This document shows positions 3,001-55,691 of a DNA stretch of 64,000 nucleotides, piece by piece. Numbering within the stretch: the first letter of the stretch is position 1; each line of letters begins with the position of its first letter. Origin of the DNA: Eutreptiella sp. 'Long Island Sound 2002' (Eukaryota > Protista > Euglenida). The DNA lies in assembly GCA_964036045.1 (NCBI GenBank), contig OZ038378.1, positions 7,564,001-7,628,000 on the forward strand, given 5' to 3'. A model generated the notes under the pieces. The model was given only the letters and a program-made list of their open reading frames with translations, was not told where the DNA came from and ran no database searches. The position numbers and the translations under genes were made by a program.

Positions 3001-6000
3001 TCGACGACGATCCGCTTATGGCAAAGCGCAACGTGTTGGAGATCACGCGGATTCGGGTCTCGGACCACTGCACGACGGTATCGGAGAGCGACGCGGTGAT
3101 ATCCATGTGGAACATGGATTCGGTAGTGACGTGCAGCGTGTGGGTGGAAGGGCGCCGCCTCATCCTCTTTGGTGTCAGCCCCGCCAAGGCTGCAGCACAG
3201 GGGCAGGTGTGTGTGCATTGTTGTGGCATGGTCCCTCCCTGTTGTGGCCCTTTGGCAGCGCGGTTGTGGAGGCGCTGTGGGTGCGTTTGGGATGGCACAG
3301 CCTCCGGTACCCTGACAAGACCCTTGAAGGGCCTCCAGTGCCCTGACACGACCTTCATACATCCTCTGGCACCACTGGTACCCTGGCATGACCTTCATAC
3401 AGACACACATACACACATCTTTTCACACTCACAAACTGACCCCCGACCATAGCACAACTGACCTATGCTGATGCATGTTGCAAGGGCATGAGGCTTCAAG
3501 CAATAGTCGGGCTCCTGCGTTCTTGGACGGCGTCGCTAAACCACAAACACAGCCTGTGATGCTTTGGTAAGCTGCACAATGAACCAGGGCCATACTCTCT
3601 CTTCTGTAGAGCGTGGCAATGGCGTCAACAGGTCAACATGCACATTTTTTCTTGCTGGTCGCTTTTCCCCCCTACCCAGTCTCCACAACGGTCACGAACC
3701 ATAACACTGCGGCGCCCCGTCGGAAGCATGGAAGCAAGTCCCCGAGCACTCTACCTTGACCTCATCCTCGACCCCTGCCTCAACCTCGCGCCCGCATGGA
3801 TTTGCATGTATTCTTCGAATCAGGGGCCCATACAATTGTCCGTGGGACGCCGCACGCGGTGGCTGGAGGCCCCGGTCGTCCACGTTGCAAGGGTCTTACC
3901 ACGCACTGTGGCTTCCCTGCAGTCATTGCTGCTCAGCGGCCGCGCGTTGGAGGAGTTCGACGCTGTGGGCGTCATCCTCCGAATCTCCGAGACACGGGTG
4001 GTGCCCGTCAGCACCGGAGACATGCATGTGACTTCTGCATGGCTGACGGACTGTCGCGACTCCGGCGCTGATGGGGGGGCAGCGGTCCTGGGTGTCGCCA
4101 TTCGCGAATTCCCCGGGTCCCGTACCATCGATGCGTCGCAGCTGCGGCCGGGGCACGTGTTCTGCTTCCAGAATCTGCGCCTGAGCTCGACGCACGCGGA
4201 GGCGGAGGTCACGGACGTGACGGTGATCATGGAACATTCCCGAGCGGCGTACCTCAGCGCGGAACGTGAGCGTATCCTGGAGGTCTTACGGCAGAATCCA
4301 GGGTACTGTGAGCAGCTGCAGCACTCACTCCACGATGAGTTCGGAGCTGCGAGTCCTCGTGAGCCTTCCGGGAACAGGTGCTGGGCGTACCTTTTGGGTA
4401 GCGATGGCACTAAGCCGGAACGGGGGGTTGCAGACTCCCTCCAGCGCCGCAACCTCCCTCCCCTACACCGCCAAGGGAGGTTGAGGACAGCTGACTCGGC
4501 AGCAGGGCCTCCATCTACAGAGATTTGCATGATACACACCGCTTGCTCTTCTGAGCCCGCGAATGGGAAGTGCAAATTTTTTGTTACGGCCTGTTTATAC
4601 CCAGGCTCATGACGGCGGTATCTATGCAGCGGCAGGGCTGCTTCACCCATTTCGAAGCCTTTCTTATTGTTCACCTGTGGCACATTCTCGGATGTGACTT
4701 ACGAGTTGCATCCATACCAATGATACCCCATTTTGCACACCCCTGTTTCAGAAAACACTACGAGCAACCCATTTCCAGACCTCAAATTCTTTCTTGATTT
4801 CCCAAAACAGGGCAGGTGGGAGGGGTGGGGTGGTTGGGCGCCCGCTAGACCCTTTTTTTGTTTCAATTACACATCCTCAACCTGGGATACAATATTTCGG
4901 TGCTTCGCTACATTGTTTCGTGCGTGCGTGCGCGTGCGCGCATGTGTGCGTCCACACTCATGGTGAGCCCATGAGTGTTTGCTGAATCCAAGTTGTTTAC
5001 ATATGTCCCAGGTTCAGGAATGATATTATCACAAGACACGAAAGAAAAAATTAGAAATAGATAATTGGTTGCAATTTTGTTGTTGTTTTTAATTGTAATT
5101 TCAAGGTTGACATATTGAACAAAGTTCAGATCTTTTTGAGAGCGATGTGCGTGCAATACTGACAAGGCGCAAGGCCAGAGGTTCGCAGGTTAGGGCTGGC
5201 TCACTGCCTGCACTACCCTTCCCCACCCACCCCGTCGATCACAGTGTGGCGGAAGGACCGGGGCCTCCCGGTCAAGTTATCTCACCTGATGCCCTCCCGG
5301 GCGCCCTAGAGCTCTCTCCATGTACCATAGGTGGCACCTCTGATCCCCCCCGAGCAACCGGACAATAGACATTGTAGAGCTTCCCTTGGTAGACTAGATA
5401 GCTAATGCTCTCTGAAAGGGGTCGGAGTTGTGAGGAATTCTGCTTGCGGGCTGCCGCATTGCGATCCAAACTGCAGAAGTATCTGTAAGAGGCCCTCTAT
5501 GATGTCCACCTTCCAATTTGCCAAAATGCCGTCCAATTACCTTCTCCATTGTCATTTGGATCTCGGTCCAGTTGAGGTAGAGAGTGAATTCCTTCTCGAA
5601 CCATGTTTGTTCGACCAGTCCTCTCCTGGCACAAACTGCTAGCTATGGGGTTCTTGATATAGGATGCCAAAGTGTTGGTGTGCAGATGCCTGTCCTGGTG
5701 CGCGGAGGAAATGCTGAAGAGGCTCGCCGGAAAAGGCTTGATGTGCCACACTGGCTGTGCAGCTATTTTTGGATTGCCACCGTTCATCCATTGTGCATGA
5801 AGCGCAGGCCATGAGCGTGCTGTATGGTGTACATGCACTCTGGCTGCCCTCCTGCCTTGCACTATGTGTGCACTGGGAAGCCCACAGCGTTTGGCAGCTG
5901 CCCGCTGAGCCCATTCCTACATGCCCGCGCTCCCACACTCCAAAAGACACCCCGAGCACAGCACATACGACAAAACAAGCAAGGATAATCACGGGTGCCA

Positions 6001-8044
6001 TCTCAATGATGGGTCCATCTCCACCTGTGCGATGTCGCTTTCCCAACAAATGTCATGATGTGTTCCGACACACTGCAAGTACCAAGCCAGAAAAACCATG
6101 ATAGCAATCGTTTTTGCGTCAAATGCAGGTGGCCTCATCATTTGCGGTGTGCCTCGTATGCTGCCCCCTCCAACCCACCTGTGTGAGCTGCTCGCCTGAG
6201 GCTACTGCCAGTGCATGGACGGTGTGAGTTTATCTTTTTTAGTCAGCTTATTTGCCGAAACCCTCGCTCCCCTCGCCCCCACCCTCCAGGGCTCGGTCAC
6301 GGCAGCCCTTGCGGGGCAGCGGGGAAAGTGCCCCCCCCCCCCCGTGCCTAGGAACCGCCTTGCGCAAGAACCGCCCCCTGGTTCCGCGGTCGAATTCTTG
6401 CACCACTTTTTTTTACCAGGGTATTGGGGTTTTCATGGTTCTGGTGGATGCAGGACAGCTATTCAGGTGTGCAGGACAACATTTCATGTGTGTTGCTACG
6501 GGTCCCCCCATCATCAGGGGGAACCCTATTAGTCAGTCACAGGCGCACATGCCCCTTAAACCCCTCCCCCCTGCTCTCGACCCCTTCCCCGAAGCAACCA
6601 GCCCCTGACAAGGAAACAAACAAAAGTCAATTAAACACGTCCGAACCAGTTGAACATTAGATCATTCCATGCACGTTGGAAGGCACACTACAGCCCAGTC
6701 AGCTGAGATTCACTCCTTTGGGGTTCATTTGTCAAGGTGGTTAACTGTGGGAAAGGAGAGGGCGCGCATGCCCCGGCGCAATGCGCCGGAAAATTTTTTT
6801 TCCGCGGTACGGGGCTGCCCACGGTCATGCGTAAGAACCAACCCCTGGTTCCGCGGTCGAATTTTTGGGGGAAAGTGTGCGCAAGAACTGCCCCCTGGTT
6901 CCGCGGTCAAACATTGCCGGTTCCTGGGCACGGGGGTGGGGGGGGGGTAGGCTCCAACATCCTGCACTCTCGGTTTCCCCATCCCATGCTCTGCTCTCTT
7001 TGTTACCCGAACTCTGCACCCCTGCCCTTGCCCAGGCGGCTTCACACTCCGTCGGTCGCCCCGTCCCTACTGCCTCCCGCAAGCCTCCCCACTGCCCCGA
7101 ACACTCCGAAGGTGCACTCCTTCGGCAACCTCCGCGTGACCGATACACAGCCCGTCACGATTCTGGGGCCTGCAGGCCTCAAATACCATCTTTCCACGGC
7201 CCTCGTGCCCCACTGCCTGTCCGCCGCCCGCCTGCCGGCCGAGCCCCGCACCACCGCCAGTTCCTGCCCAAGCGCGAAGGAGGGGCCCCCTGCGGCATTC
7301 GCCAGCCCGCCCCCCGCCCCGTGCGCCTGCCTGGGGCACTTCGACGACGGCAGTCAGCTGCTGATGGTGGCCTTTGAAGGACCGGTGCTGGAGGCCCTGC
7401 TCCTGCACGAGGGCTCCCCCGTGCGAATGGCGCTGCTGGAGCTCGCGCGGACCGGGTGGCTGCCTCCCGCTCCCAGCGAAGGGGGCGAGGCAGACCCCCC
7501 TGCCCCCAACGCCGATCATGCCCCGACCCCCGACTGTGGGGCCGGGCCGTCCGCGGCGTGCCAGGGCCCTCCGGCCGAGGACCCGGGGGGTGTTCTGCAG
7601 CAGCTCGCGGCGCTGCGCGCGCGCGCGTTGCAGGAGCTCCCGGGCGGCCTACCTCAGCACCTGCAGCACGTCCTCGGCTGCAGCTGCGTCCTGAACGACC
7701 TGCAGCTCCGCGATTTCAGCGGCGACACGGCCGTAGAGGCCGCGCTCGTGCGCCGGTACCGGCCGCAGGTGTGCCGGCCCGGCCCCGATCGTGGCGTGAC
7801 CCCGGGTGCCATGGCCCCCGGTGCGACCCCCGGACCCGCTGTTCTGTGGTGGTGCGAGGGGCAGTGGGCCCGGATGGTGGGGCATCTGCTGTGCTGCCTC
7901 CGCGCGTTCCTCAAGGTGACCATCGCCCCGGTCCCGCAGGCGGATCCGTTGGTGGCGGCGGCACTGCAGCCCGTGTGGCGCGTGTCGTATGTGCACAACT
8001 TTGGGCAGCGCTGTCAGATCCGGGACTTGCTCAGCGCCGGTTGA
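1..8044 (+). CDS. BRCA2: BRCA2-like DNA-binding protein, 3' part; join(<1..161,2040..2399,2967..3206,3824..4377,7036..8044)
   Basis: Exon peptides align by eye, in order, with the BRCA2 DNA-binding domain: AIDVIVQRRYPSVYIE..RSARAEEKA (cf. human VDVIIQRAYPIQWME..RNEREEEKE), DGMGLYWRM..PDQQEAL (cf. DGAELYEAV..SEEQLRAL), RNVLEITRIRV..AVISMWN..EGRRLILFGVSP (cf. RDVTTVWKLRI..VILSIWR..EGKRYRIYHLAT), IQLSVGRRTRW (cf. IQLAATKKTQY), EFDAVGVI/WLTD/LRPGHVFCFQNLRL (OB3). Introns 162-2039, 2400-2966, 3207-3823 and 4378-7035 are all GT..AG with matching phases (0,0,0,2). The last exon join is less certain than the others. The gene start lies upstream of the window. Confidence 0.85.
631..848 (+). repeat. 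Truncated copy of the MITE-like family seen at 46371-47210
   Basis: tgccaacacgg..ggtgccattgttg..cactgagtgtcccg..ggtatgtggggtatattcgg..tatttggaacacc..gggtctgcatg..ggtgcctgtgttgc..tttgtcaaca matches 46374-46588, then the two diverge. Confidence 0.85.
2457..2530. repeat. (CTGTG)n pentanucleotide microsatellite in BRCA2 intron
   Basis: Direct reading of the sequence. Confidence 0.95.
6331..6948. mobile_element. MITE-like element with terminal inverted repeats and subterminal direct repeats
   Basis: Left ccccgtgcctaggaacc is nearly the reverse complement of right ggttcctgggcacgggg. Three copies of gcg(c/t)aagaac..cccctggttccgcggtc occur near 6361, 6829 and 6879. No TSD could be resolved because the ends are poly-C/poly-G. 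Confidence 0.6.
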
Positions 8045-11000
8045 GCGCCGACGTTGAAGCGGGGGATACCTCCAGAGGGGCCTGTTCGGTGTCCATTCGG
8101 GAACGGGCGCGCCCGGAGCCCGCCCTTTGGGGCCAACTGTTGACGGTGCACCACCCGCCGCTCGTGGCGACCAGCCCCACTTTGTGCGGGTAACCGCCGA
8201 ACACCATCGGTCGGCCACTAACCACCAGGTCCCCCGCCGGCGGCCTCTGGGCAGCCTCGGACACACCCCTAAAACAGCGGAAAGCGAGGGTCTCTTCAAG
8301 GGGAACGTTTGTGATCACTCCAGTTTTTCGAAGGTTCCGAATTCAGTGCGCCTTTCATTTGGAGCCCCCGCTTTCCCCCAGGGCCCTCTCCCCTCCTGAC
8401 GCCGCCACCACGCCCACAGTCCAGTCGTCGATGGGCCCGTGGTACGAGACAGGGCCGTCGAGGGCCTCCTCTACACCCCGATGCAGCCCCCCCCCCCCCC
8501 CCCCACTGCCCCTGTTCCTGTTCTTCGGTGGCCGCTGTGTTCCTCAACACAGCGGACGGAGAATGTACGCAGAAGTCAGTGGGGGTGGCACATGCAGTTT
8601 CGCTGCTTCGCGAGTCTATTGCGCGGTGCCAGTGCACTCGGGGGCGGGGGTCGGGCGTGAATCGGACCCTCGCTCTCCAGCGCCGAATGGTTTGAGAATT
8701 GAGAGGCGTTGCCGGGGGAGTACAGGCAGTGGACCGTGGCAAGGCACGACCGCATTGTCGTTGTGTCGCAGCTCGAACTGACCGCCGGGCGTATGTGATG
8801 GTCCTGGACACAACAAGTGCCTGGTACCCCTCCTTGACTCAGCGCCGGTTTGTTTGACTGGATGACCCCCCCCCCCCCCGCGGGAGTGCAGGGGCGCAAG
8901 GGGGAGGGGCTACCGACAGACCGCAGACCCGGAGGAATCCGACGGGCCTCCTCTGGTGTGCTCTGATTTCCGTGAAGTGGGACACCAATGTCAAGCAGCA
9001 GTCCGCAAGAGGGTCCGGGCGTGTACGGGCGTGTACGGGGGGACGTCGATCGGAAGGCCATTGCTCAGTGAACAACTGCATCGGAATGGACCTGAAATGA
9101 ACTGGCCTTGGCCAAACGTGGCCGTGGAATCGAAACATCGCCCTCGCCCACAAAATTCGGATCAGGAAGTTTACGCTGCGGGGCCATCAAACCTCCACAT
9201 TTTTTTTTGGATTCGCATTCAGCGGACCGTGCCCGGGAATGCCATCAGTGTTAGCCGAGGGCCACCATGTCACGGCCCAGAGTCAGGAGCGCCGTGGCCT
9301 GTCTTTTGTTTATGTTTTGGCTCGGGGATGCCTCAAGTTTTATCCCCCCACCCCCCCACACACCTGCCGACATTCCGTGTCCAACTGTCCAACGAACAGC
9401 GGCTGTTGGACCCGTATGAATTGGGACCCCATTTGACTTGACACACCACACACCACGTTTGGGGTCACAACATTTGGATTGAGCAAACGGGGAAATGGAA
9501 GCCACATCGTTGCGTCTTTGGAAGAGCGATCGTGATTCGTGGCTGTGAGGCACAAAGACCTCTCACTTGTGGGGCCTGTTGCGTGGGGAGGGTCTCTGGT
9601 GCTCACAGGGCACGGTCACGAGAGGGGCCGGGCGCACACAACACACCCCAAGCGCGTGCTGCACGTATTTTTTTTGCACGCAATCGCGTTTTACCGTCCT
9701 GCTCACAAGTCCACGCCTATTGACACATTCGTGCATCCGACACACCTGTGGCCTCATCGCATCAGTGCACAGGGCAAGGGATCATCAGTCCCAGGCATCG
9801 ATTGCAGCTTTGTGTGCTTCCACCCTTTCGCCAAGTGCCATCCAGGGGCTTACGCATCGTCCTGGGGTGTCCGGTGAGTGCTCTCCTTTGCCTGTGTACA
9901 ACTCCGGGTCGCCAGTGGGGGAGCACTCGACGCGGCGTGGGGGCGCGTCCATGAGGGCAACTGTCCAGCGGGGACGAAAAGAGCACACTACAAAGTGTGC
10001 AATACTGGGAAATGATGATGGGAACCAGTAGTAGGAGGTGGTACTGTCCCCGCGGTGCGTGCGCGCTGTGCGGCAACGCCCCCCCCCCCCCCCATCCCAT
10101 CCCTTCCCACATCATTGGTCTAAAGGCCGAAAGTGCCCATGGCGGCGGCATTCAGTCAATAAGAACCGACCATTGCTCTCTCTCCTCCCCTCCCTTGGGG
10201 TGACATTGCTGGGCACTCTGGAAGTCTGTGCTCCTCTTCTTCTTCTTTGACAACGATGATGTCCCAGTCCCTGTCACAGCTCGGCAATTGATAAACTCCT
10301 CCGCTCAATGCTTTTGGGTTCCAGAAGCCCTGCTGGACAGTCGGCCCAGTGTGAGGTAAGGCTTGGGGCCAGTACTTGTCAAAACTGAAGCGGTGGCCCG
10401 CTGATTTGGGGAGGATAGTCGACCCCACTTGGTGCGAGGTGAGGCTTGGGGCTTCACATAGAACCCTTAGTTGTTAAAATGTGAAACAACAGGACGTTTG
10501 TGGTGGGGTGGATAGTGGACCTCACTTTGGAGGCCTAGTACTCTTAGTAGACATCATCAATTTCAATAAAACAAGGTTTTGGTCAGGGGAGGGGGATGGG
10601 GGTCCAACAGAAAGATCCTCAGGGCAACATCAAAGTTTTCTACCTGAAAAACATTTTGGGCCATTTTCGGTGCAGAAGCCCTTGGGTCTCAGACCCGCCC
10701 CCCCCTAAAGCGTGTGTGTCGAAGGGGAGGGGGGCTGTCGTGAGGGTTTTTTTTTTGCATCTTTCACAGTTCCAAGGTTCCAAGGGGGGGGGGGGACTGA
10801 AGCATGCTGGTGGTGGTGATTGAGAAGCGATCTTTGTCAAGTCTCCGTGGTTTCGAAAAGGTCCGGTCAACCTGGGATCCATGCGCCGCGCGCACTCCAT
10901 GCTGGCCATGAATATGCCGGGCCGCATCTCTGTGCATCACTGAAACCCCTCGCCAGGCGGCAAAGATGTCCTGAAAAACGGTGTGTGTGAGGGCCGCCAT

Positions 11001-47295: not shown

Positions 47296-50200
47296 CCTCT
47301 CTATAACATGAGCCGCAGCACCTGCCCCATGGGCATGCGGATGGGGGTATTGGCCTATTGCACAATGAAAAGGTTCCCCAAATGGCAAAACAATCGTCAG
47401 CATAGTCCCTTTTTGATTGAAAGGCAGCGGCGCTGGTGATTGCTCGTGCGGCGACGGCCTAAACCCAAAACTGAAGTCGCTGCCTCACCCTGAATTGTTG
47501 GGATTCCTTCCTTGGGTACACTGGTTTGCAACCGCCAGCTGCACTGCAGGGTACGCCCCACGTGACATCCCTCATTATCTCTTGGGCCGCCGAATCTTAG
47601 AGGGTGTGAAGCCGCTTGCTGCGATGAAGGACGCCCTAGTGTTGCCCACCCTCACGCTGGCTGTCTGTCCATCAGCCCCACAAGCCACATGCCCCTCTCT
47701 GTGCACTGCATCAGATATGCCCGTAAGACCTGTAGACAACTGAGAAACGTGCTTTAGACCAGGGTATTAAGGTGTTGGTGCGCCCGCGCGCGCGCGTGTG
47801 TGTACGCATGATTGGATGGCTGCATCCAATACAGACAGCCCCCCTTTTGCCTGGCATTGTGTTGGTGGTGGTGCTTGCGATCACTGGCATTACTGCTGCA
47901 GTTGGACGGCTTGTGCTGTTTATGGGCGTTTGTGGTGTGTGACTGGACCCTTGGTGCAGCAACCGGCCTCTCGCAGAAATCAGCGATGTCAGTGAGACGT
48001 CACACCAAGGTGCTCGCTGATGGAGAGAGATAACCTGGTGAACCCAGGTTGCAGCTGGCTCTGAGCACCAGTCACTGTTTGTTTGTTTCTGTGTGCCATG
48101 TATGATGTATCACGGGGTCTGCTCTGCTATCAGATTCCTGCACAGTTTCACACTGTATACATGGTTTGCACATGACTGTTAGTTCTCAGTTCTTACTTCG
48201 TTCTAACCCTGTGTGTGCATGTTCGTAGGTGGAGGCAAGGATCCCACTGGTCATTACCAGCAACCGCTGCATGAGCCAGTTGCTTTCCCCCTTCTGTGCA
48301 GGCTTCATACCATTGCCTTTCTGGCCTGCCCACAGGACCCCTTGCCAGTGCAGCTCTACTACACCTCCATGCCACACCAGGGGGCAACCCTCACTGAATC
48401 CCGATGCACAGGCCAGGTTTTCATGCCTGAGATCTTCTTTAGTTTGCAGGGGGCTGTGCCTTCTTGGTGCTGCGAATGTCTCCATCCACTGTTCCTTTTC
48501 TTGGGCACAGGTGACATACTGCAATAGCATCAGCGTGGCTGAGCACGTGGTTATGATGATCCTCAGCCTCGTACGGAATTACCTGCCGTCCAATCTAATG
48601 GTCCGGGAGGGGGGCTGGAACATTGCGGATTGTGTGGCGAGGGCATATGACGTGGAGGGTATGCATGTGGGCACCGTGGCAGCTGGTCGCATAGGCCTAG
48701 CTGTGCTGCAGCGACTCAAGGCCTTTGATTGCAAGTTGCATTACACTGATCGGCATCGGCTGCCCCGAGAGGTTGAGATCGAATTGGGGCTGACATTTCA
48801 CGACACCGTAGACGAAATGGTGAAGGTGCTTATGTCTCCCGCAGCTGAACCCCTCCCTTTTCATTCCCATCTGACTTTCCCACTTGAACCTCCATGTTGA
48901 TCTTCCTGCCCCACACCTTATGCCCATCCACTTACGACCCCCTTCTCCCCCGATTACACCCCACCTCTGCCCTCAAGGCTCTCCTGCTTGCCCCCTTTTG
49001 CTTTGCGTAGTCGTGACTTGAATGAAGTTCACATAGAGAGAATGGAGAGCTCCCCTGCCGTGGTTACAGATACAAACAGAGGGGGGCGCTAAGAAGTTGT
49101 AAAGGGCGAAGAAATAGTAGTCTGGGGACCGCATGGTATCTTCAGTTGCAATGTGCATTGGAGCTATGTGCAGCGCTAAGCTTGCTGAAGTTCTGGCGGA
49201 GGAAACGTTGCTGTAGTTTCTGAACACCTCGTCTTCGGGGCAAAGTACTCCAGTTGTAGCAGCAAGGTTGGCAAGGCTCGCATGGGCCATTGTCCAATTT
49301 GTGTATGCGGGCCCAAGTTGGTGCACTGTATCGAACAATGGTTGCCACTTGTTGGGGTGAACATGCTTAGGCACATGCACTTGGAGGCCAATACGAGCGT
49401 GAGTGAATTTTTGTGAGAAGAGATGTGCTTCAGTGTGTTGTGGAGGGCTCGGGCTGGGGACAACAGCACTCCTGATGGCGGCCTAGGATGGAGATGGAAA
49501 CAAAGCGGAGATCCCCCTCCCCTGCCTCCTCAGAGACAGCATCCTTAGGGAATGCACATGCCCTTTCGAGATTGTGGGTACACGGAGGAGAGGCACTGAG
49601 ATTGGTGGCCTAAGCAGTGCCTTAAGCTGCGTATACCCAGGGCTACCTCTGATTTTCTCTTCCTCCACTCACGGGGAACAGTCCAACTTACTCTTCGTTT
49701 GTTTACAACAGGAGAAAAAAGTACATGAACTCAGACGAAGATGTAAATCCCACACAGAAAACTAATAATGCTTGCGGGTAAATGCAATGTTGCGTGATAA
49801 GGGATGGAAAAAACGAAACTAGAACAAACGCTTGGGGCCAGAAGGCCCAAGCAACCCCCCGCACTGCTGGGTAGCATGCGGCCAAGGAGGAGAAGAAGCG
49901 GTGAATGCCCCTACAGCTCTACTCACAAGATATACCAAGGTACCGGGACAGCAGGGGAAGGGAGTGAAGAGGCGGAGCAGGAGCAGTGCGGTTTCACAAC
50001 TGCTGGAGGTAGTGAGCTGGGGGGCGGCCAGCACACAGTCCAAGATGATGCAGATGCGGCTGTGCAGGGACAAATTTCATACACACAAATTGCAACAGGC
50101 CCTCAAGCTTCAGTGCTCCATTACCAAGCAAACAGGGGGGCTGCAGCTACAGTGGTGAAGGCAGTGGCGGCAGTTGGTGCTATGCTTGCAGGTGACCAAG

Positions 50201-53200
50201 GTGCTTGAGAGGCTGCACAGGGCTAAGTGGGGGAATAGGCGAGCATCTCAAGTCATCACCGCCCACAGCATCGGAACTCACCAAAGGGAATTAGGTAAGC
50301 GCACGAAGCGCACTACGGACTCTGAGGGCCCAGAGGGCGGTAAGGAGATGGTCTAAGTGCCCAGCATGGCTTGCATGGTGGGTTGTTTGCGAGCTGAGAA
50401 TGCTCCGTCGCGGAACTTGGACACGAACAAATTGTTGGCTGCAAATCAGTTGGACCACACCGTCTGAGCATTGGTTGGATGTATTGATGACCGTGCTCCG
50501 CTCTGTAACTTAGCCTTATCGACCTCGGCCATTGCTCCGCACTGTAATCTGGAGTATGCGCTGTGAGGGGGTGTCTTGTTCTGCTACCAACAGAGGACCC
50601 TCATCGCACTCTAGGGGTCCAAGAAACAGTTGTGAAGCATGTTTTAGACCCTGTCTACGTGTTCTTCAACCAGTCACCCTTTTGGCGCTCGGGAATGGGG
50701 TCTCTGCGAGGTGCCTTGTGAAGACGTTTGCAGATTTCATTCTTTGGCTGGCTTGTGTCTGGTTCAGGCTCTAAAGCCATCGAAAAAACTTTGCACTGCA
50801 TGTGCACTGCATGCATGATGCGTGCCCCTGCATCTGCACGCAGATCCATGCATTCAAAACCAGAACCCGATCCACCAAATGCACGGAAACAACGGAAAAC
50901 TATCACTGTTGACAGAACAAGATGCCTCTTCTGAACATTAGCAGATGCTGTCGACATTTGTTGCCAATTGCGTGCCTCTTGTCGCCTTGAGCACAGCAAC
51001 TTATGGCGAATTCAAGCACGATCCCAGCCTAAGCAAAGGATGTCATAGGTGTCATGGCAATACAACGCAACATTCATTCAGCCCTGGCAAACCCGTACTT
51101 TGTGCAAACACGGTCTCCCTTTTCCCCACCTCTGTCCTCTGTTTTCAACCCCTCCAAGGCCCAGCCCTGTGGCTGCCCTCCCCTCTTCTCAGGTCTGTGA
51201 CGTCATCACAATCAATTGCCCGCTGCATTCGGAGACGCAGTACCTCTTCAACGCAGACCTCATCTCCCAAATGAAGCGGGGCTCGTATCTGATTAACACC
51301 GCCCGTGGGAAGATCTGCGACCCTCGGGCTGTTGCCCAGGCGCTGGAGTCTGGCCAATTGGCCGGATACGCAGGCGACGTGTGGTTTCCTCAGCCAGCCC
51401 CTCAGGACCACCCCTGGAGGACCATGCCCCACCACGGCATGACGCCCCACATCTCGGGCACCACCTTGAGCGCCCAGGTACGTCTCGTGCGCGTGTACTG
51501 GGCAGCCTTTTTCCCGGTTTTTTCATTTGGGGAGGCAGTCAATAATGGACAAGTCAAGGGGCTGGCTTCGGAGAAGTGGCACAATTGACAGAGCTGTTAA
51601 TCGGTCTCTATGAACTTCGGTCAGACACGTCAAGACTGTTTTTGGGTGATTCAACTGGCAACAGGAGTGTGATGGACAGCCGAGGCAACAATGGCATTGG
51701 CTGGAAGCCAGTGGGTGAACTGTTGGTACTTGGTGTTAGGCTGCGGGAGACATGACCTTTGTTGTGCTGATGCTTGTTGGTGGTATGAGATTTCAGTGCC
51801 TCGCTATCAGGCAAACAAGAATTTCCAGGACCCTAACCCTAGCTTTACAGGTTGAAAGGCTGGAAGGAGGGGGGAGGGGGGGGGGCTTCCCCCCACCTCC
51901 CAGATCCTTTTAAACCAATGATGCCTTGGACGGATCCGCTAGTACCGCCGCCAGTCTGGACCCTCAGGGGTTGATTTCGGGTGTTTTGCCGGTCGACCCT
52001 CTTTTAAGGGGGACCGTATAACCCCCCCCTGCCTCTGTGACCGTCCCCCTCCCCCCCTTCCCGCAGTTGAAATTCTTCCCCCGCTTCTTTTGGCATCCGC
52101 CGTCCCCTTCCCTCCATCGGGCGGGACAACTGGGCAGGGCGTGTTTTCCAGTGCTGGTATTGGCGTCTCTCAAGCCCTCCTGCGGCGTTTCTAGCGTTTC
52201 AGCAACCTACGCAGTGGGTGCCCCGCTGTGCAGTCGTGGGCGCCGCTGCATCTGTGGGTTGCCATCACCGCCGCAATTCAGTCGATGCACAAAGTCAACC
52301 AAACGTCCCCCATTTGTCCCCAACATTTGATCACGTTTGTGTGACACCACCAACAAGCTCCATAGGACAATGACAACCGGATTGGGTAGCAGTGGGCACC
52401 GCATTCTGGCACTGCCCTTCGTGAGGCCGAGGTCATGTTCGTCCATGATTGCCCTTGTCGGCCAGGTGCAGCACTGAGGCCTCAACGAGGCTCCAGCCTG
52501 AGTCTTGAGGGTATGGGAAGAGAGGGTGACTGCATTCGGCCATTGCTCCGCACTGTTATCTGGAGTATGCGCTGTGAGGGGGTGTCGTGTTCGGGTCCGT
52601 GGTAAAACTGAGTAAAATTTTTTTTTTTAAAAATTTTTTTTTAACTCAGTTTTAAAACTGAGTAAAAAAGCAATTTGTTACTCAGTAAGTGGGGTTTCTA
52701 CTCAGTTGCGAAACTGAGTAAAAAAAAAATTTTTTTTTTACTCAGTAAAAAACTGAGTAGAAAAATTTTTTTTTTTTTACTCAGTAAAAAACTGAGTAGA
52801 AAAAAATTTTTTTTTTACTCAGTAAAAAAATGAGTAGAAAAATTTTTTTTTTAAAAAAATTAGTAGAAAAAAGCCACTTTGCCCACTTGTGGGCCACTTC
52901 TGATTTTGGCCCCCGCTCTGAAGCGGTGGGGATCCCCGATACGGCAGGGGTGAGGTAGCCACTTTGCCCACTTGTGGGCCACTTCTGATTTTGGCCCCCG
53001 CTCTGAAGCGGTGGGGATCCCCGATACGGCAGGGGTGAGGTAGCCACTTTGCCCATTTGTGGGCCACTTCCGATTTTGCCCCCCGCTCTGAAGCGGTGGG
53101 GATCCCCGATACGGCAGGGGTGAGGTAGCCACTTTGCCCACTTGTGGGCCACTTCCGATTTTGCCCCCCGCTCTGAAGCGGTGGGGATCCCCGATACGGC

Positions 53201-55691
53201 AGGGGTGAGGTAGCCACTTTGCCCACTTGTGGGCCACTTCCGATTTTGCCCCCCGCTCTGAAGCGGTGGGGATCCCCGATACGGCAGGGGTGAGGTAGCC
53301 ACTTTGCCCACTTGTGGGCCACTTCCGATTTTGCCCCCCGCTCTGAAGCGGTGGGGATCCCCAATACGGCAGGGGTGAGGTAGCCACGTCCGCGCGTCCA
53401 TTGATATGTCTTTTGCACCACCGTTGATTGTGGTGCAAGTATATAATTCGGGCAATTACCATTGGGTGCTCCGCTTGTTGTTGATTGCCCCTACCCGTGA
53501 ATACCTTTGCCTTAAGTTTGACCCCCTACTTGACAAGCCACACATTGTTGGGGCAAACAAGGAGGAGTTGGCTGTTGTGGATGAGCTTGCGGAGCGAGAA
53601 GGCATCCAACCACAACAACGGAGGAAGTGGGCAACGTTTTTGTCTGCTTTCGGTTCCCTTGCATTTGCAATTGCACCCCTGTATTCCACCTTCACCAGGC
53701 AGGATGATTTTGTCAGTTGCCATCCGGCATGTTTGTTGATGTTGCATTGTGCCTTGTCTAGACGTGTTGTCAAAGGCGAATTGCAAGTGCCACAGGATAG
53801 ATTGTGGTTATTGCGTGAGATGGCACAAGCTACTTTGTACTACAGTGGTTCCAAGTTGGCCCCCACACCCCGGACCCAGGCAATGCATTGGGAGGTGTCT
53901 CGGTTGTACCCCACGCCCAAATCTGCAGACCCCCCTGACACATGCTTTTTTTGCGATGGCACACCCGCCATAGCGTGCCAGGAATGTAAGGTTCTTCATT
54001 GTACCTTCCATACCACTGTCTTGTGTCAGTCCGAGATTTGTGTAGGATTGTGCCAATTCCGGGCGGCCCCCGTTGCTGCTGCTGCTGCTGTTGTTGCTTT
54101 TGCTGCAGTTACTGCCGCCAATGCCACACATGCCACTCCTGCCAATGCCAATGCCGCTGATGACACCCGTCCCGGTGTGTGGATCCGTCGGAAGTGGTAT
54201 GCGTTGCCTCCTCAATACCCCCAAAATGCTGATGGTCAATTGGAAAATGACCAAGCATTTTGCAGAAAGCTGCATTTGGAAAAGAAAGAAGATCTCTTTG
54301 AGAGATGCAAGCTGAATCCCAGCCCGAGAGGCAAGCCTCACAAAAGACATACTAAGGCCGACTTGATCTTCAAGCGTGTCTTTTGTAACTACTTGTAAGT
54401 AGTTGGCCCCACCCTCCCTCCCTCCTCTGTGCATGCATGCATACGATACTCAACCCTCTTTGGTGAAGTGGTTGTGTGATCCCTCCCTCCTCTGTGCATG
54501 CATGCATACGGTACTCAACCCTCCTTGGTGAAGCGGTTGTGTGATATATATATGATGGTTTGGCCCGGGTGGGGCGCCACTAACACAAGTGGCCGGGAAT
54601 CGACTCGGGGGCCTTGTGCCCTTAAACAAAAGTACCACCTACCATCAAAGTGTGCAGTTTTTTGTGCAATTTTTTTTCAAAAAAAATTGTCTTTTTACTG
54701 AGTAAAAAAATTAATTTTTTTTTTAATTTTTTTTTTACTCAGTTTTACCTCAAATCTACTCAGTTTTACCACATTTTACTCAGTTTTACCTCGTCTGGTA
54801 CTCAGTTTTACCAAATACCCGTCGTGTTCTACTACCAACAGAGGACCCTCATCGCACTCTAGGGGTCCAAGAAACAGTTGTGAAGCATGTTTTAGACCCT
54901 GTCTACGTGTTCTTCAACCAGTCACCCTTTTGGCGCTCGGGAATGGGGTCTCTGCGAGGTGCCTTGTGAAGACGTTTGCAGATTTCATTCTTTGGCTGGC
55001 TTGTGTCTGGTTCAGGCTCTAAAGCCATCGAAAAAACTTTGCACTGCATGTGCACTGCATGCATGATGCGTGCCCCTGCATCTGCACGCAGATCCATGCA
55101 TTCAAAACCAGAACCCGATCCACCAAATGCACGGAAACAACGGAAAACTATCACTGTTGAAAGAACAAGATGCCTCTTCTGAACATTAGCAGATGCTGTC
55201 GACATTTGTTGCCAATTGCGTGCCTCTCGTCGCCTTGAGCACAGCAACTTATGGCGAATTCAAGCACGATCCCAGCCTAAGCAAAGGATGTCATAGGTGT
55301 CATGGCAATACAACGCAACATTCATTCAGCCCTGGCAAACCCGTACTTTGTGCAAACACGGTCCGAACGAGGTACAGGTAGTGACACAGTACCAAAAGTC
55401 TTGCACCGCATGCGCACTGCATGCACCAGAGCCCCTACCATATGCAGCAGGGTTTGGGAATGGAGTGGCCCTATGTGCCATACACCGCTGCAGGCACGGT
55501 ACGCGGCCGGCACCCGTGAGATCCTGGAGGCATATTTGGACGGTAAGCCCATCGTTGATGCGTACTACATCGTCAAGGATGGCAGACTTGCTGGGGCTGG
55601 TGCCCACGCCTACACCTCCGGCAACGTCACTGGGGGCTCCGACCAAGTCTCGCACTTCCTCGCTGGGGCGGGCCCTGATGCCGCACACTGA
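44482..55691 (+). CDS. fdh: NAD-dependent formate dehydrogenase, bacterial (Pseudomonas/Mycobacterium FDH-like) type with N-terminal presequence, 431 aa; join(44482..44979,48511..48825,51193..51477,55494..55691)
   Basis: Near-continuous match to Pseudomonas sp. 101 FDH: [129 protein letters not shown]. Three phase-0 GT..AG introns: 44980-48510, 48826-51192, 51478-55493. Confidence 0.97.
45190..45921 (+). repeat. Three degenerate ~100-nt units each ending in (CA)n, in FDH intron 1
   Basis: ccaaacattgctgcagt..tgtatga..ttgggcgtcacaca (~45190-45306), ccaaacattgctgcagt..tgtatgatagcgaacgct..ttgggtgtcacaca (~45514-45627), and partial ..tagcgaacgct..ttgggcaacacaca+(GA)n (~45815-45921). Confidence 0.75.
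46289..47293. mobile_element. Foldback-like MITE with nested inverted repeats, in FDH intron 1
   Basis: (TC)n + atgccaacacggtgggg on the left mirrors cccaccgcgttggcat + (GA)n on the right. Internal ~112-bp inverted arms at 46616-46728 and 46838-46951. A truncated sister copy lies at 631-848. Confidence 0.8.
50525..51115 (+). repeat. ~590-bp segment in FDH intron 2, duplicated in intron 3; this copy is the empty site of the MULE insertion
   Basis: Matches 52536-52592 + 54830-55363 with about 5 mismatches seen by eye. Confidence 0.95.
52872..53387. repeat. 85-bp tandem repeat, 6 near-identical copies, inside the MULE
   Basis: Units start at 52872, 52957, 53042, 53127, 53212 and 53297, with a partial unit at 53382. 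Confidence 0.97.
53406..54398 (+). CDS. Ulp1/peptidase C48-like cysteine protease domain plus Cys/His-rich zinc-finger-like region, 330 aa, carried by the MULE (possibly 5'-truncated)
   Basis: Ordered motifs [10 protein letters not shown] (His), FDPL (Asp), RQDDFVSC (Gln/Cys) fit the clan CE catalytic order. They are followed by CFFC..CQEC..HCTFH..C..IC..LC. Confidence 0.7.
   Translation: MSFAPPLIVVQVYNSGNYHWVLRLLLIAPTREYLCLKFDPLLDKPHIVGANKEELAVVDELAEREGIQPQQRRKWATFLSAFGSLAFAIAPLYSTFTRQDDFVSCHPACLLMLHCALSRRVVKGELQVPQDRLWLLREMAQATLYYSGSKLAPTPRTQAMHWEVSRLYPTPKSADPPDTCFFCDGTPAIACQECKVLHCTFHTTVLCQSEICVGLCQFRAAPVAAAAAVVAFAAVTAANATHATPANANAADDTRPGVWIRRKWYALPPQYPQNADGQLENDQAFCRKLHLEKKEDLFERCKLNPSPRGKPHKRHTKADLIFKRVFCNYL
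54411..54545. repeat. ~66-bp direct tandem duplication inside the MULE, downstream of the ORF
   Basis: ccctccctcctctgtgcatgcatgcatacg(a/g)tactcaaccctc(t/c)ttggtgaag(t/c)ggttgtgtgat occurs twice. Confidence 0.9.

What the first reader, a model, noticed from the sequence alone, without database searches (positions are those of the whole stretch)
52584..54829. Young Mutator/Foldback-like transposon carrying a Ulp1-like (SUMO-protease-type) ORF, with its empty site in the same gene
Seen: 9-bp TSD, G-rich TIRs, palindromic ACTGAGT/ACTCAGT subterminal arrays, an internal 6x85-bp array, no transposase, and an uninterrupted 330-codon ORF with H-D-(Q)-C protease motifs plus a Cys/His finger. The unoccupied target exists at 50573-50581. 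Known: 9-bp TSDs typify MULEs, and plant MULEs (e.g. Kaonashi) carry Ulp1-like genes proposed to counter host SUMO-dependent control. Inference: a mobile, non-autonomous protease-cargo element in a euglenid, possibly encoding an anti-silencing deSUMOylase. This is the most system-like feature in the window.
Basis: partly seen in the sequence, partly recalled or inferred. Interest (0 to 1): 0.8.

Follow-up and report, generated by a model that had tools for sequence, protein, structure and literature searches.

The report
Deleted Mutator transposon, transposase tail ORF
This is a real, young jumping gene of the Mutator type in a euglenid alga, but it is a cut-down copy whose "protease gene" is only the last 330 codons of the family's long transposase gene, so it is an ordinary defective transposon and not a new protease-carrying system.

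Summary
Window 52593-54820 is a 2,228-bp insertion with a perfect 9-bp target duplication (GTCGTGTTC), 22-bp imperfect inverted ends, ACTGAGTA subterminal repeats, a 6 x 85-bp array and an open 330-codon ORF. An uninterrupted paralogous target lies at 50573-50581.

The element belongs to a young family with thousands of candidate loci in this 2.28-Gb euglenid genome. A 9,088-bp copy with the same ends and a perfect 9-bp duplication carries a 1,425-codon open frame. That frame holds a Mutator/IS256-type transposase core (Pfam MULE E 5e-5; NCBIfam IS256 E 1.3e-4; both below curated cut-offs), a SWIM-like motif and a conserved C-terminal domain.

The window's ORF is the last 330 codons of that frame. 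It starts about 79 residues inside the conserved C-terminal domain. Its deletion junction occurs once in the genome, and other short copies have different junctions. It is therefore a one-off internal-deletion derivative, not an amplified cargo element.

The Ulp1/C48 identity passed no formal test (Pfam, PDB sequences, profile comparisons, two AlphaFold models with fold searches). Only weak hints point to clan CE.

Mutator transposases fused to Ulp1 domains are already known in plants and animals. This scan had already reached the same reading on other DNA of this genome (s1-219471).

The parts
52584..52592 (.). Left copy of the 9-bp target-site duplication GTCGTGTTC
52593..52614 (+). Left terminal inverted repeat (GGGTCCGTGGTAAAACTGAGTA); the CCG at positions 5-7 is the left-end form in the sampled copies whose left end was recovered
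52607..52860 (.). Left subterminal region: ten ACTGAGTA/TACTCAGT motifs in alternating orientation, separated by A/T runs (39-bp period). Inferred to be transposase-binding sites
52872..53387 (+). 85-bp tandem array, 6.1 units at 98%. Full-length copies hold 30-48 units. The long minus-strand 'ORFs' across it are artefacts of the repeat
53388..53393 (+). Deletion junction with about 6 bp of filler (GTCCGC) between the array and the 3' part of the transposase gene. This junction occurs once in the genome
53406..54398 (+). 330-codon remnant ORF, equal to the last 330 codons of the family's 1,425-codon frame. It holds the second part of the conserved C-terminal domain (H19, D39, Q99, C105), a Cys/His cluster (codons ~180-215), an Ala-rich stretch and a basic tail
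54415..54545 (+). Two tandem 65-bp units in the 3' untranslated part of the element
54697..54812 (.). Right subterminal region: five ACTGAGTA motifs, four of them as direct ~20-bp repeats of the terminal motif
54799..54820 (-). Right terminal inverted repeat (reverse complement GGGTATTTGGTAAAACTGAGTA)
54821..54829 (.). Right copy of the 9-bp target-site duplication
50525..51115 (+). Uninterrupted paralogue of the insertion target (591 bp, 96-99% identical to 52536-52592 plus 54821-55363). The empty site GTCTTGTTC is at 50573-50581. It lies upstream of the last detected exon of a formate-dehydrogenase-like gene

Best explanation
Window 52593-54820 is a single, internally deleted (non-autonomous) copy of a roughly 9-kb Mutator-superfamily DNA transposon that is abundant and young in this euglenid genome. 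Full-length copies run: TIR, ACTGAGTA subterminal repeats, a long 85-bp array, about 1.4 kb of unique sequence, one frame of about 1,400 codons, then the right subterminal repeats and TIR. That frame holds N-terminal regions, a MULE/IS256-type DDE core, a SWIM-like motif, a conserved C-terminal domain, a Cys/His cluster and a tail. The window copy has lost about 4.6 kb (the unique region and the first ~1,090 codons) and about 25 array units, so the array is joined to codon ~1,090 through a few bases of filler. Shown: the collinearity, the unique junction, the 9-bp TSDs and the empty paralogous site. Inferred: a full-length family member supplied the transposase that moved this copy, binding the TIRs and ACTGAGTA repeats and making 9-bp staggered cuts. 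Also inferred: the deletion arose by interrupted gap repair or slippage, helped by a ~12-bp near-identity (GTAGC(C)ACTTTG) between the array unit and the gene. The remnant protein probably has no function, because it lacks the first third of its own conserved domain.
For: The family is large: more than 5,000 first-look candidates, and 121 scored copies at 92-100% protein identity. Many copies have far longer open frames that end in the same 330 codons. The C14 copy (9,088 bp) has the same TIRs, a perfect 9-bp TSD (CCAAGGATT), 30 array units and a 1,425-codon frame. That frame hits Pfam MULE PF10551 at E 5.2e-5 (24.0 bits, cut-off 27.6) and NCBIfam IS256 transposase at E 1.3e-4. The window element aligns to positions 1-~346, the array, and 7641-9088 of the full-length copy. 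The junction sequence has one match in the genome. Ten short copies show at least seven different junctions, and one of them (L008) sits exactly on the microhomology. Of 13 complete copies, 8 have perfect 9-bp TSDs and the rest match at 5-8 of 9. Private substitutions give a dN/dS-like ratio of 0.76 and shared ones 0.48. The window copy is 1.7% from the consensus, with 10 non-synonymous and 6 synonymous single changes plus one doubly changed codon.
Against: Both transposase matches fall below the curated family cut-offs. No catalytic alignment was inspected residue by residue, and the SWIM motif was read by eye only. Whether the deletion happened before or after insertion is unknown. No expression or activity data exist. 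The 1,425-codon frame was taken stop to stop; introns and the true start codon (first Met at codon 42) were not verified.
Confidence: 0.85

Rival explanations
1. One reading: a non-autonomous MULE that carries a captured, functional Ulp1-like (SUMO-protease-type) gene as cargo, like plant Kaonashi elements, possibly acting against host silencing.
For: The ORF is uninterrupted. An H, D, Q-x5-C pattern in the Ulp1 order is present and is kept in 85-93% of 72 family members. Weak hints to clan CE: XopD at Foldseek ranks 2 and 6 (E 0.3); ElaD/SseL-like_C in 2 of 72 members (E 0.083); and the best hhalign local alignment puts HW on HW and FDP on YDS.
Against: The ORF is the 3' end of the transposase frame, not a separate captured gene. 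It lacks about 79 residues (three predicted helices) of the conserved domain. Its junction is unique, so this form never amplified. Five of ten short copies have a broken ORF, and private changes look nearly neutral. No formal test detects C48.
Confidence: 0.04
2. In the full-length protein, the conserved C-terminal domain is a highly divergent clan CE (Ulp1-like) cysteine protease fused to the transposase, as in Ulp1-bearing Mutator and Ginger1 transposases of plants and animals. The window keeps only its catalytic second part.
For: The motif order and spacing fit: H to D is 20 residues, and Q to C is 6 positions as in C48. The predicted secondary structure puts His at the start of a strand, Asp at the end of the next, and Cys within a few residues before a helix start. 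The architecture has published precedent (PMC2836005). The genome has genuine C48 domains, including a repeated 1,182-codon frame.
Against: Every formal test is non-significant. Profile HMMER against 1.84 billion proteins found only 262 hits; the 150 listed are short fragments scoring E below 1e-18, read as the same family. VIA-align found no CE protease. Most positions in this young family are equally conserved, so conservation of the four residues says little.
Confidence: 0.45
3. The truncated ORF has a new role as a regulator, for example a dominant-negative or titrating fragment that uses the Cys/His cluster and the basic tail. Truncated transposase products of other transposons act this way.
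For: The frame is open. The Cys/His cluster and the tail are complete.
Against: It is a single copy with a unique junction. No promoter evidence exists. Differences from the consensus are 10 non-synonymous to 6 synonymous. Similar short copies are often broken.
Confidence: 0.04

Closest known systems
Mutator-like elements (MULEs) whose transposase carries a C-terminal Ulp1 (Pfam PF02902) domain: hydra, lancelet, Arabidopsis, maize, rice, melon (Bao, Kapitonov & Jurka 2010, PMC2836005, which cites Hoen 2006 and van Leeuwen 2007)
   Same: 9-bp TSD, TIRs, one long transposase frame with a MULE-type core, and an extra C-terminal domain followed by a Cys/His finger. Many internally deleted derivatives.
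   Different: Here Pfam or any other formal test does not recognise the C-terminal domain as C48. The transposase core scores below the Pfam cut-off. The element carries a one-sided 85-bp satellite and short (22-bp) TIRs with ACTGAGTA subterminal repeats. The host is a euglenid (Discoba), and my literature searches found no published MULE description for that group.
Kaonashi (KI) MULEs of Arabidopsis
   Same: A Mutator-type element that contains a Ulp1-like coding region.
   Different: In Kaonashi the ULP-like gene is treated as an acquired gene spread by the element. Here the ORF is the truncated 3' end of the transposase frame itself, and this deleted form is single-copy.
Internal-deletion derivatives of autonomous cut-and-paste transposons (Ds from Ac, dSpm, deleted Mu and P elements; textbook knowledge)
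   Same: Both ends are kept, the internal coding sequence is lost, the junction shows microhomology or filler, and transposition depends on transposase supplied in trans.
   Different: Nothing essential. The deletion happens to leave a long open remnant that begins at an in-frame ATG.
Foldback elements
   Same: Palindromic subterminal repeats at both ends.
   Different: The inverted-repeat regions are short (about 250 bp and 120 bp). The large array is on one side only and in direct orientation. The family encodes a Mutator-type transposase.

Membership tests
Mutator superfamily (MULE) | Target-site duplication of 9-11 bp | tested here: met
   Perfect 9 bp in the window. Of 13 complete family copies, 8 are perfect and the others match at 5-8 of 9.
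Mutator superfamily (MULE) | Terminal inverted repeats | tested here: met
   22-bp TIRs, 19 of 22 identical. They are found in the sampled copies wherever an end lay within the locus.
Mutator superfamily (MULE) | MULE/IS256-type DDE transposase (PF10551) | tested here: inconclusive
   Absent from the window copy. In the full-length copy: PF10551 E 5.2e-5, 24.0 bits against a cut-off of 27.6; NF033543 IS256 E 1.3e-4, far below its cut-off. D..D..CxxH motifs were read by eye.
Mutator superfamily (MULE) | SWIM zinc finger after the catalytic core (common but not universal) | tested here: inconclusive
   A CxC...CxG pattern at codons ~711-723 of the long frame; no Pfam SWIM hit.
Peptidase C48 (Ulp1/SENP), clan CE | Match to the family profile (PF02902) at or above the curated score | tested here: not met
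   No hit even at E up to 10 for the ORF, the full domain or 72 family members. An HMM of five genuine Euglena C48 domains scored -0.4 bits, rank 110 of 2000 shuffles. hhalign gave E 0.2.
Peptidase C48 (Ulp1/SENP), clan CE | Catalytic His, Asp, (Gln), Cys in that order with C48-like spacing | tested here: met
   H19, D39, Q99 and C105 of the window ORF, kept in 58-66 of 68-71 members. This is a pattern only and was not statistically tested.
Peptidase C48 (Ulp1/SENP), clan CE | Clan CE fold | tested here: inconclusive
   AlphaFold pLDDT 46 and 58. Foldseek: XopD at E 0.3, TM 0.17. VIA-align: no CE protease.
Peptidase C48 (Ulp1/SENP), clan CE | Complete catalytic domain, including the N-terminal helical part | tested here: not met
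   The window ORF starts at position 80 of the 235-residue conserved domain. The three predicted helices before it are deleted.
Cargo-carrying non-autonomous MULE (Pack-MULE / Kaonashi type) | An internal gene distinct from the transposase gene, acquired from the host | tested here: not met
   The ORF is collinear with the last 330 codons of the family's transposase frame.
Cargo-carrying non-autonomous MULE (Pack-MULE / Kaonashi type) | The cargo-bearing form has been mobilised or amplified | tested here: not met
   The junction has one match in the genome. Other short copies have other junctions.

The most novel reading that the evidence does not exclude
The conserved C-terminal domain of this young, thousand-copy euglenid Mutator family may be a clan CE (Ulp1-like) protease so divergent that profile methods miss it. 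That would extend the transposase-deSUMOylase/deubiquitinase fusion to Discoba. The perfect TSDs and the intact 1,400-codon frames would mark a currently active DNA transposon in Euglena that could be tried as a genetic tool.
Probability: 0.4. Interest if true: 0.4.

Novelty: new member of a known kind. Interest (0 to 1): 0.25.

Why it matters
For annotation, the 330-codon ORF should be masked as a transposon remnant and not called as a euglenid SUMO protease gene. For transposon biology, it documents a large, young Mutator family in a euglenid, with intact-looking autonomous copies and many independent deletion derivatives. Such a family is the raw material for finding an active DNA transposon in an organism with few genetic tools. 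The open point of some interest is what the conserved C-terminal domain of the transposase does. The Ulp1 idea fits published precedent in plant and animal Mutator elements but is unproven here.

Tried and rejected
The following led nowhere or failed:
- Pfam on the ORF, on four long frames and on sub-segments found no C48.
- phmmer and a profile search of PDB sequences gave only chance hits: Rad6, glypican.
- The word-index protein search with the C-terminal domain returned 217 unnamed proteins with no Pfam domains, nearly all from ENA assemblies. With the whole 1,384-residue protein it returned nothing.
- HMMER profile search of 1.84 billion representatives returned 262 hits; the 150 listed are short fragments at E below 1e-18, with no bridge to C48.
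- hhalign and a custom HMM against five genuine Euglena C48 domains were not significant.
- Two AlphaFold runs reached pLDDT 46 and 58. Foldseek and two VIA-align searches gave no significant match.
- The ESM Atlas could not be used because the machine was busy at all five tries.

Readings rejected:
- Foldback element: the array is one-sided and direct.
- Merlin or other superfamilies with 8-9-bp TSDs: the profile hits go to MULE/IS256.
- An amplified cargo element: the junction is unique.
- The apparent clustering of deletion junctions is partly a bias of ranking copies by similarity to the window copy, and partly explained by the 12-bp microhomology.

Full report
**1. Observation**

- The 9-mer GTCGTGTTC flanks the element at 52584-52592 and 54821-54829. 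The element is 52593-54820, 2,228 bp.
- Its two ends are 22-bp inverted repeats identical at 19 of 22 positions.
- The octamer ACTGAGTA occurs 15 times in the 64-kb window against 1.06 expected. All 15 lie in the element's ends, ten on the left and five on the right.
- Tandem Repeats Finder gives an 85-bp array of 6.1 units at 98% (52872-53387), a 39-bp subterminal period, and two 65-bp units at 54415-54545.
- The ORF 53406-54398 is open for 330 codons.

**2. Empty site and host context**

A 591-bp segment at 50525-51115 is 96-99% identical to 52536-52592 plus 54821-55363. It carries the target once, as GTCTTGTTC. The segment exists only twice in the genome, both copies here. So the element inserted into one copy of a recent local duplication, and the other copy serves as the empty site.

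Neighbouring ORFs at 48229-48897 and 51049-51585 hit the NAD-binding domain of D-2-hydroxyacid/formate dehydrogenases. This agrees with an earlier first-reader note on this stretch (s1-213223). The empty copy lies upstream of the last detected exon. The filled copy starts about 950 bp downstream of that ORF's stop codon.

**3. The family**

The genome is a 2.28-Gb euglenid assembly (earlier notes).
- The element's DNA and its ORF each give more than 5,000 first-look candidates. All 121 scored protein matches are 92-100% identical.
- Many copies have much longer open frames ending in the same 330 codons, up to 1,425 codons.
- I fetched several of these. The C14 copy, joined from L031 and L039, is 9,088 bp. 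It has the same left and right TIRs, a perfect 9-bp TSD (CCAAGGATT), 30 units of the 85-bp array, about 1.4 kb of unique sequence and a 1,425-codon frame with its first Met at codon 42.
- The frame hits Pfam MULE (PF10551) at E 5.2e-5, 24.0 bits, below the curated 27.6.
- It also hits the NCBIfam IS256 transposase model at E 1.3e-4. The two libraries are separate and point to the same superfamily.
- By eye the frame shows the D..D..CxxH arrangement and a SWIM-like CxC..CxG motif.
- Thirteen complete copies were checked for TSDs. Eight are perfect 9-mers, one matches 8 of 9, one is perfect after a 1-nt shift at a mutated end, two match 7 of 9 and one 5 of 9.

**4. What the window copy is**

Aligned to the 9,088-bp copy, the window element keeps positions 1-~346, six array units, and positions 7641-9088. 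It lacks about 3006-7640 and about 25 units.
- The ORF's first codon corresponds to codon 1,095 of the long frame. The sequence just upstream differs because the array is joined there through about 6 bp of filler.
- The 32-nt junction sequence has exactly one match in the whole genome.
- Ten short copies show at least seven different junctions. Three copies on contig C20 share one. One copy (L008) sits on a ~12-bp near-identity between the array unit and the gene, which explains why breakpoints recur here.
- These are therefore independent internal deletions of the kind known from Ac/Ds, Spm and Mu. They are not an amplified cargo-bearing element.

**5. Selection**

Over 36 copies of the 330-codon region, 24 are intact and 12 carry stops or frameshifts. 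Among the ten short copies, five are intact.

Substitutions private to one copy give a non-synonymous to synonymous ratio per site of 0.76. Shared ones give 0.48. This is the usual picture: mild constraint in the transposing lineages and near-neutral decay after insertion.

The window copy is 1.7% from the consensus, with 10 non-synonymous and 6 synonymous single changes plus one doubly changed codon. It is young and decaying.

**6. Is the C-terminal domain Ulp1-like?**

The conserved domain spans about 235 residues of the long frame (L039:6741-7445). The window ORF starts at its position 80.

Negative results:
- No PF02902 hit at any threshold for the ORF, the domain or 72 members.
- No SENP/Ulp1 in PDB by sequence or by profile.
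- A profile search of 1.84 billion proteins returned 262 hits. The 150 listed are short fragments scoring E below 1e-18, which I read as the same family.
- The genome does contain genuine C48 domains. I aligned five of them (A3). hhalign against the family profile gives E 0.2. An HMM of A3 scores the domain at -0.4 bits, rank 110 of 2000 shuffles.

Weak positive hints:
- The CE-clan effector XopD is at Foldseek ranks 2 and 6, but at E 0.3 and TM 0.17.
- ElaD/SseL-like_C, a CE-clan family, is hit by 2 of 72 members at E 0.083.
- The best hhalign stretch aligns HW with HW and FDP with YDS.
- The predicted secondary structure places His, Asp and Cys where clan CE has them.
- The four residues are kept in 85-93% of members, but so are most positions in this young family.

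I rate the CE-clan reading at about 0.45 for the full-length protein. For the window's ORF the question is moot, because a third of the domain is missing.

**7. Comparison with what is known**

Bao, Kapitonov and Jurka (PMC2836005) state that Ulp1 domains occur in Mutator transposons of hydra, lancelet, Arabidopsis, maize, rice and melon. They also report them at the C-terminus of Ginger1 transposases, sometimes with a PHD finger. The architecture proposed here is therefore an established kind.

My searches found no paper describing Mutator elements in Euglena. That is absence from the held library only.

Within this scan, a follow-up on other DNA of the same genome (s1-219471) had already concluded that such small ORFs are tails of one long transposase frame in deleted Mutator elements that share the 85-bp satellite. 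My independent analysis agrees with it.

**8. Verdict**

The thing is a new member of a known kind, an ordinary deletion derivative of a Mutator-type transposon. Interest is low to moderate. The remaining open question is the identity of the conserved C-terminal domain of the full-length transposase.

**Limits**
- The ESM Atlas was unavailable.

Noticed in passing
window 50525-51115 and 52536-55363: A 591-bp segment is duplicated locally (2 kb apart, about 99% identical) and occurs nowhere else in the genome. One copy lies upstream of the last detected exon of a formate-dehydrogenase-like gene; the other lies about 950 bp downstream of that ORF's stop. The origin of this small dispersed duplication is unexplained.
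   Followed up: partly
   Followed up: partly
window 52781-53462 (-): Three 200-224-codon 'ORFs' on the minus strand run through the 85-bp array. Three units make 255 bp, so the reading frames simply repeat. In full-length copies the same artefact gives open frames of 800-1,500 codons (L041, L035).
   Followed up: yes
G000 C1:197535377, C1:84247907, C1:84303907, C11:30342262, C598:20412, C554:15709: A repeated 1,182-codon open frame carries a genuine Peptidase_C48 hit (about 31 bits, above the cut-off). It may be another transposon family with a recognisable Ulp1 domain, and a possible bridge to the domain studied here.
   Followed up: no
G000, many places (for example a C16:6.45-6.82 Mb cluster; C6:29992165; C8:24239576): A different, very abundant Mutator family scores 70-76 bits on Pfam MULE, with ~1,007-1,039-codon frames. 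There is also a tandem-looking cluster of 338-codon frames on C16.
   Followed up: no
L008, L002, L004-L007, L010 (short copies) and L039:6940-6990: Independent internal deletions join the 85-bp array to the same ~60-bp stretch of the transposase gene. A ~12-bp near-identity (GTAGC(C)ACTTTG) between the array unit and the gene looks like a recombination hotspot.
   Followed up: partly
all sampled copies (L001-L042): The two TIRs differ consistently at positions 5-7 (CCG on the left, ATT on the right), so the ends are functionally distinguishable. The 85-bp array is always next to the left end.
   Followed up: partly
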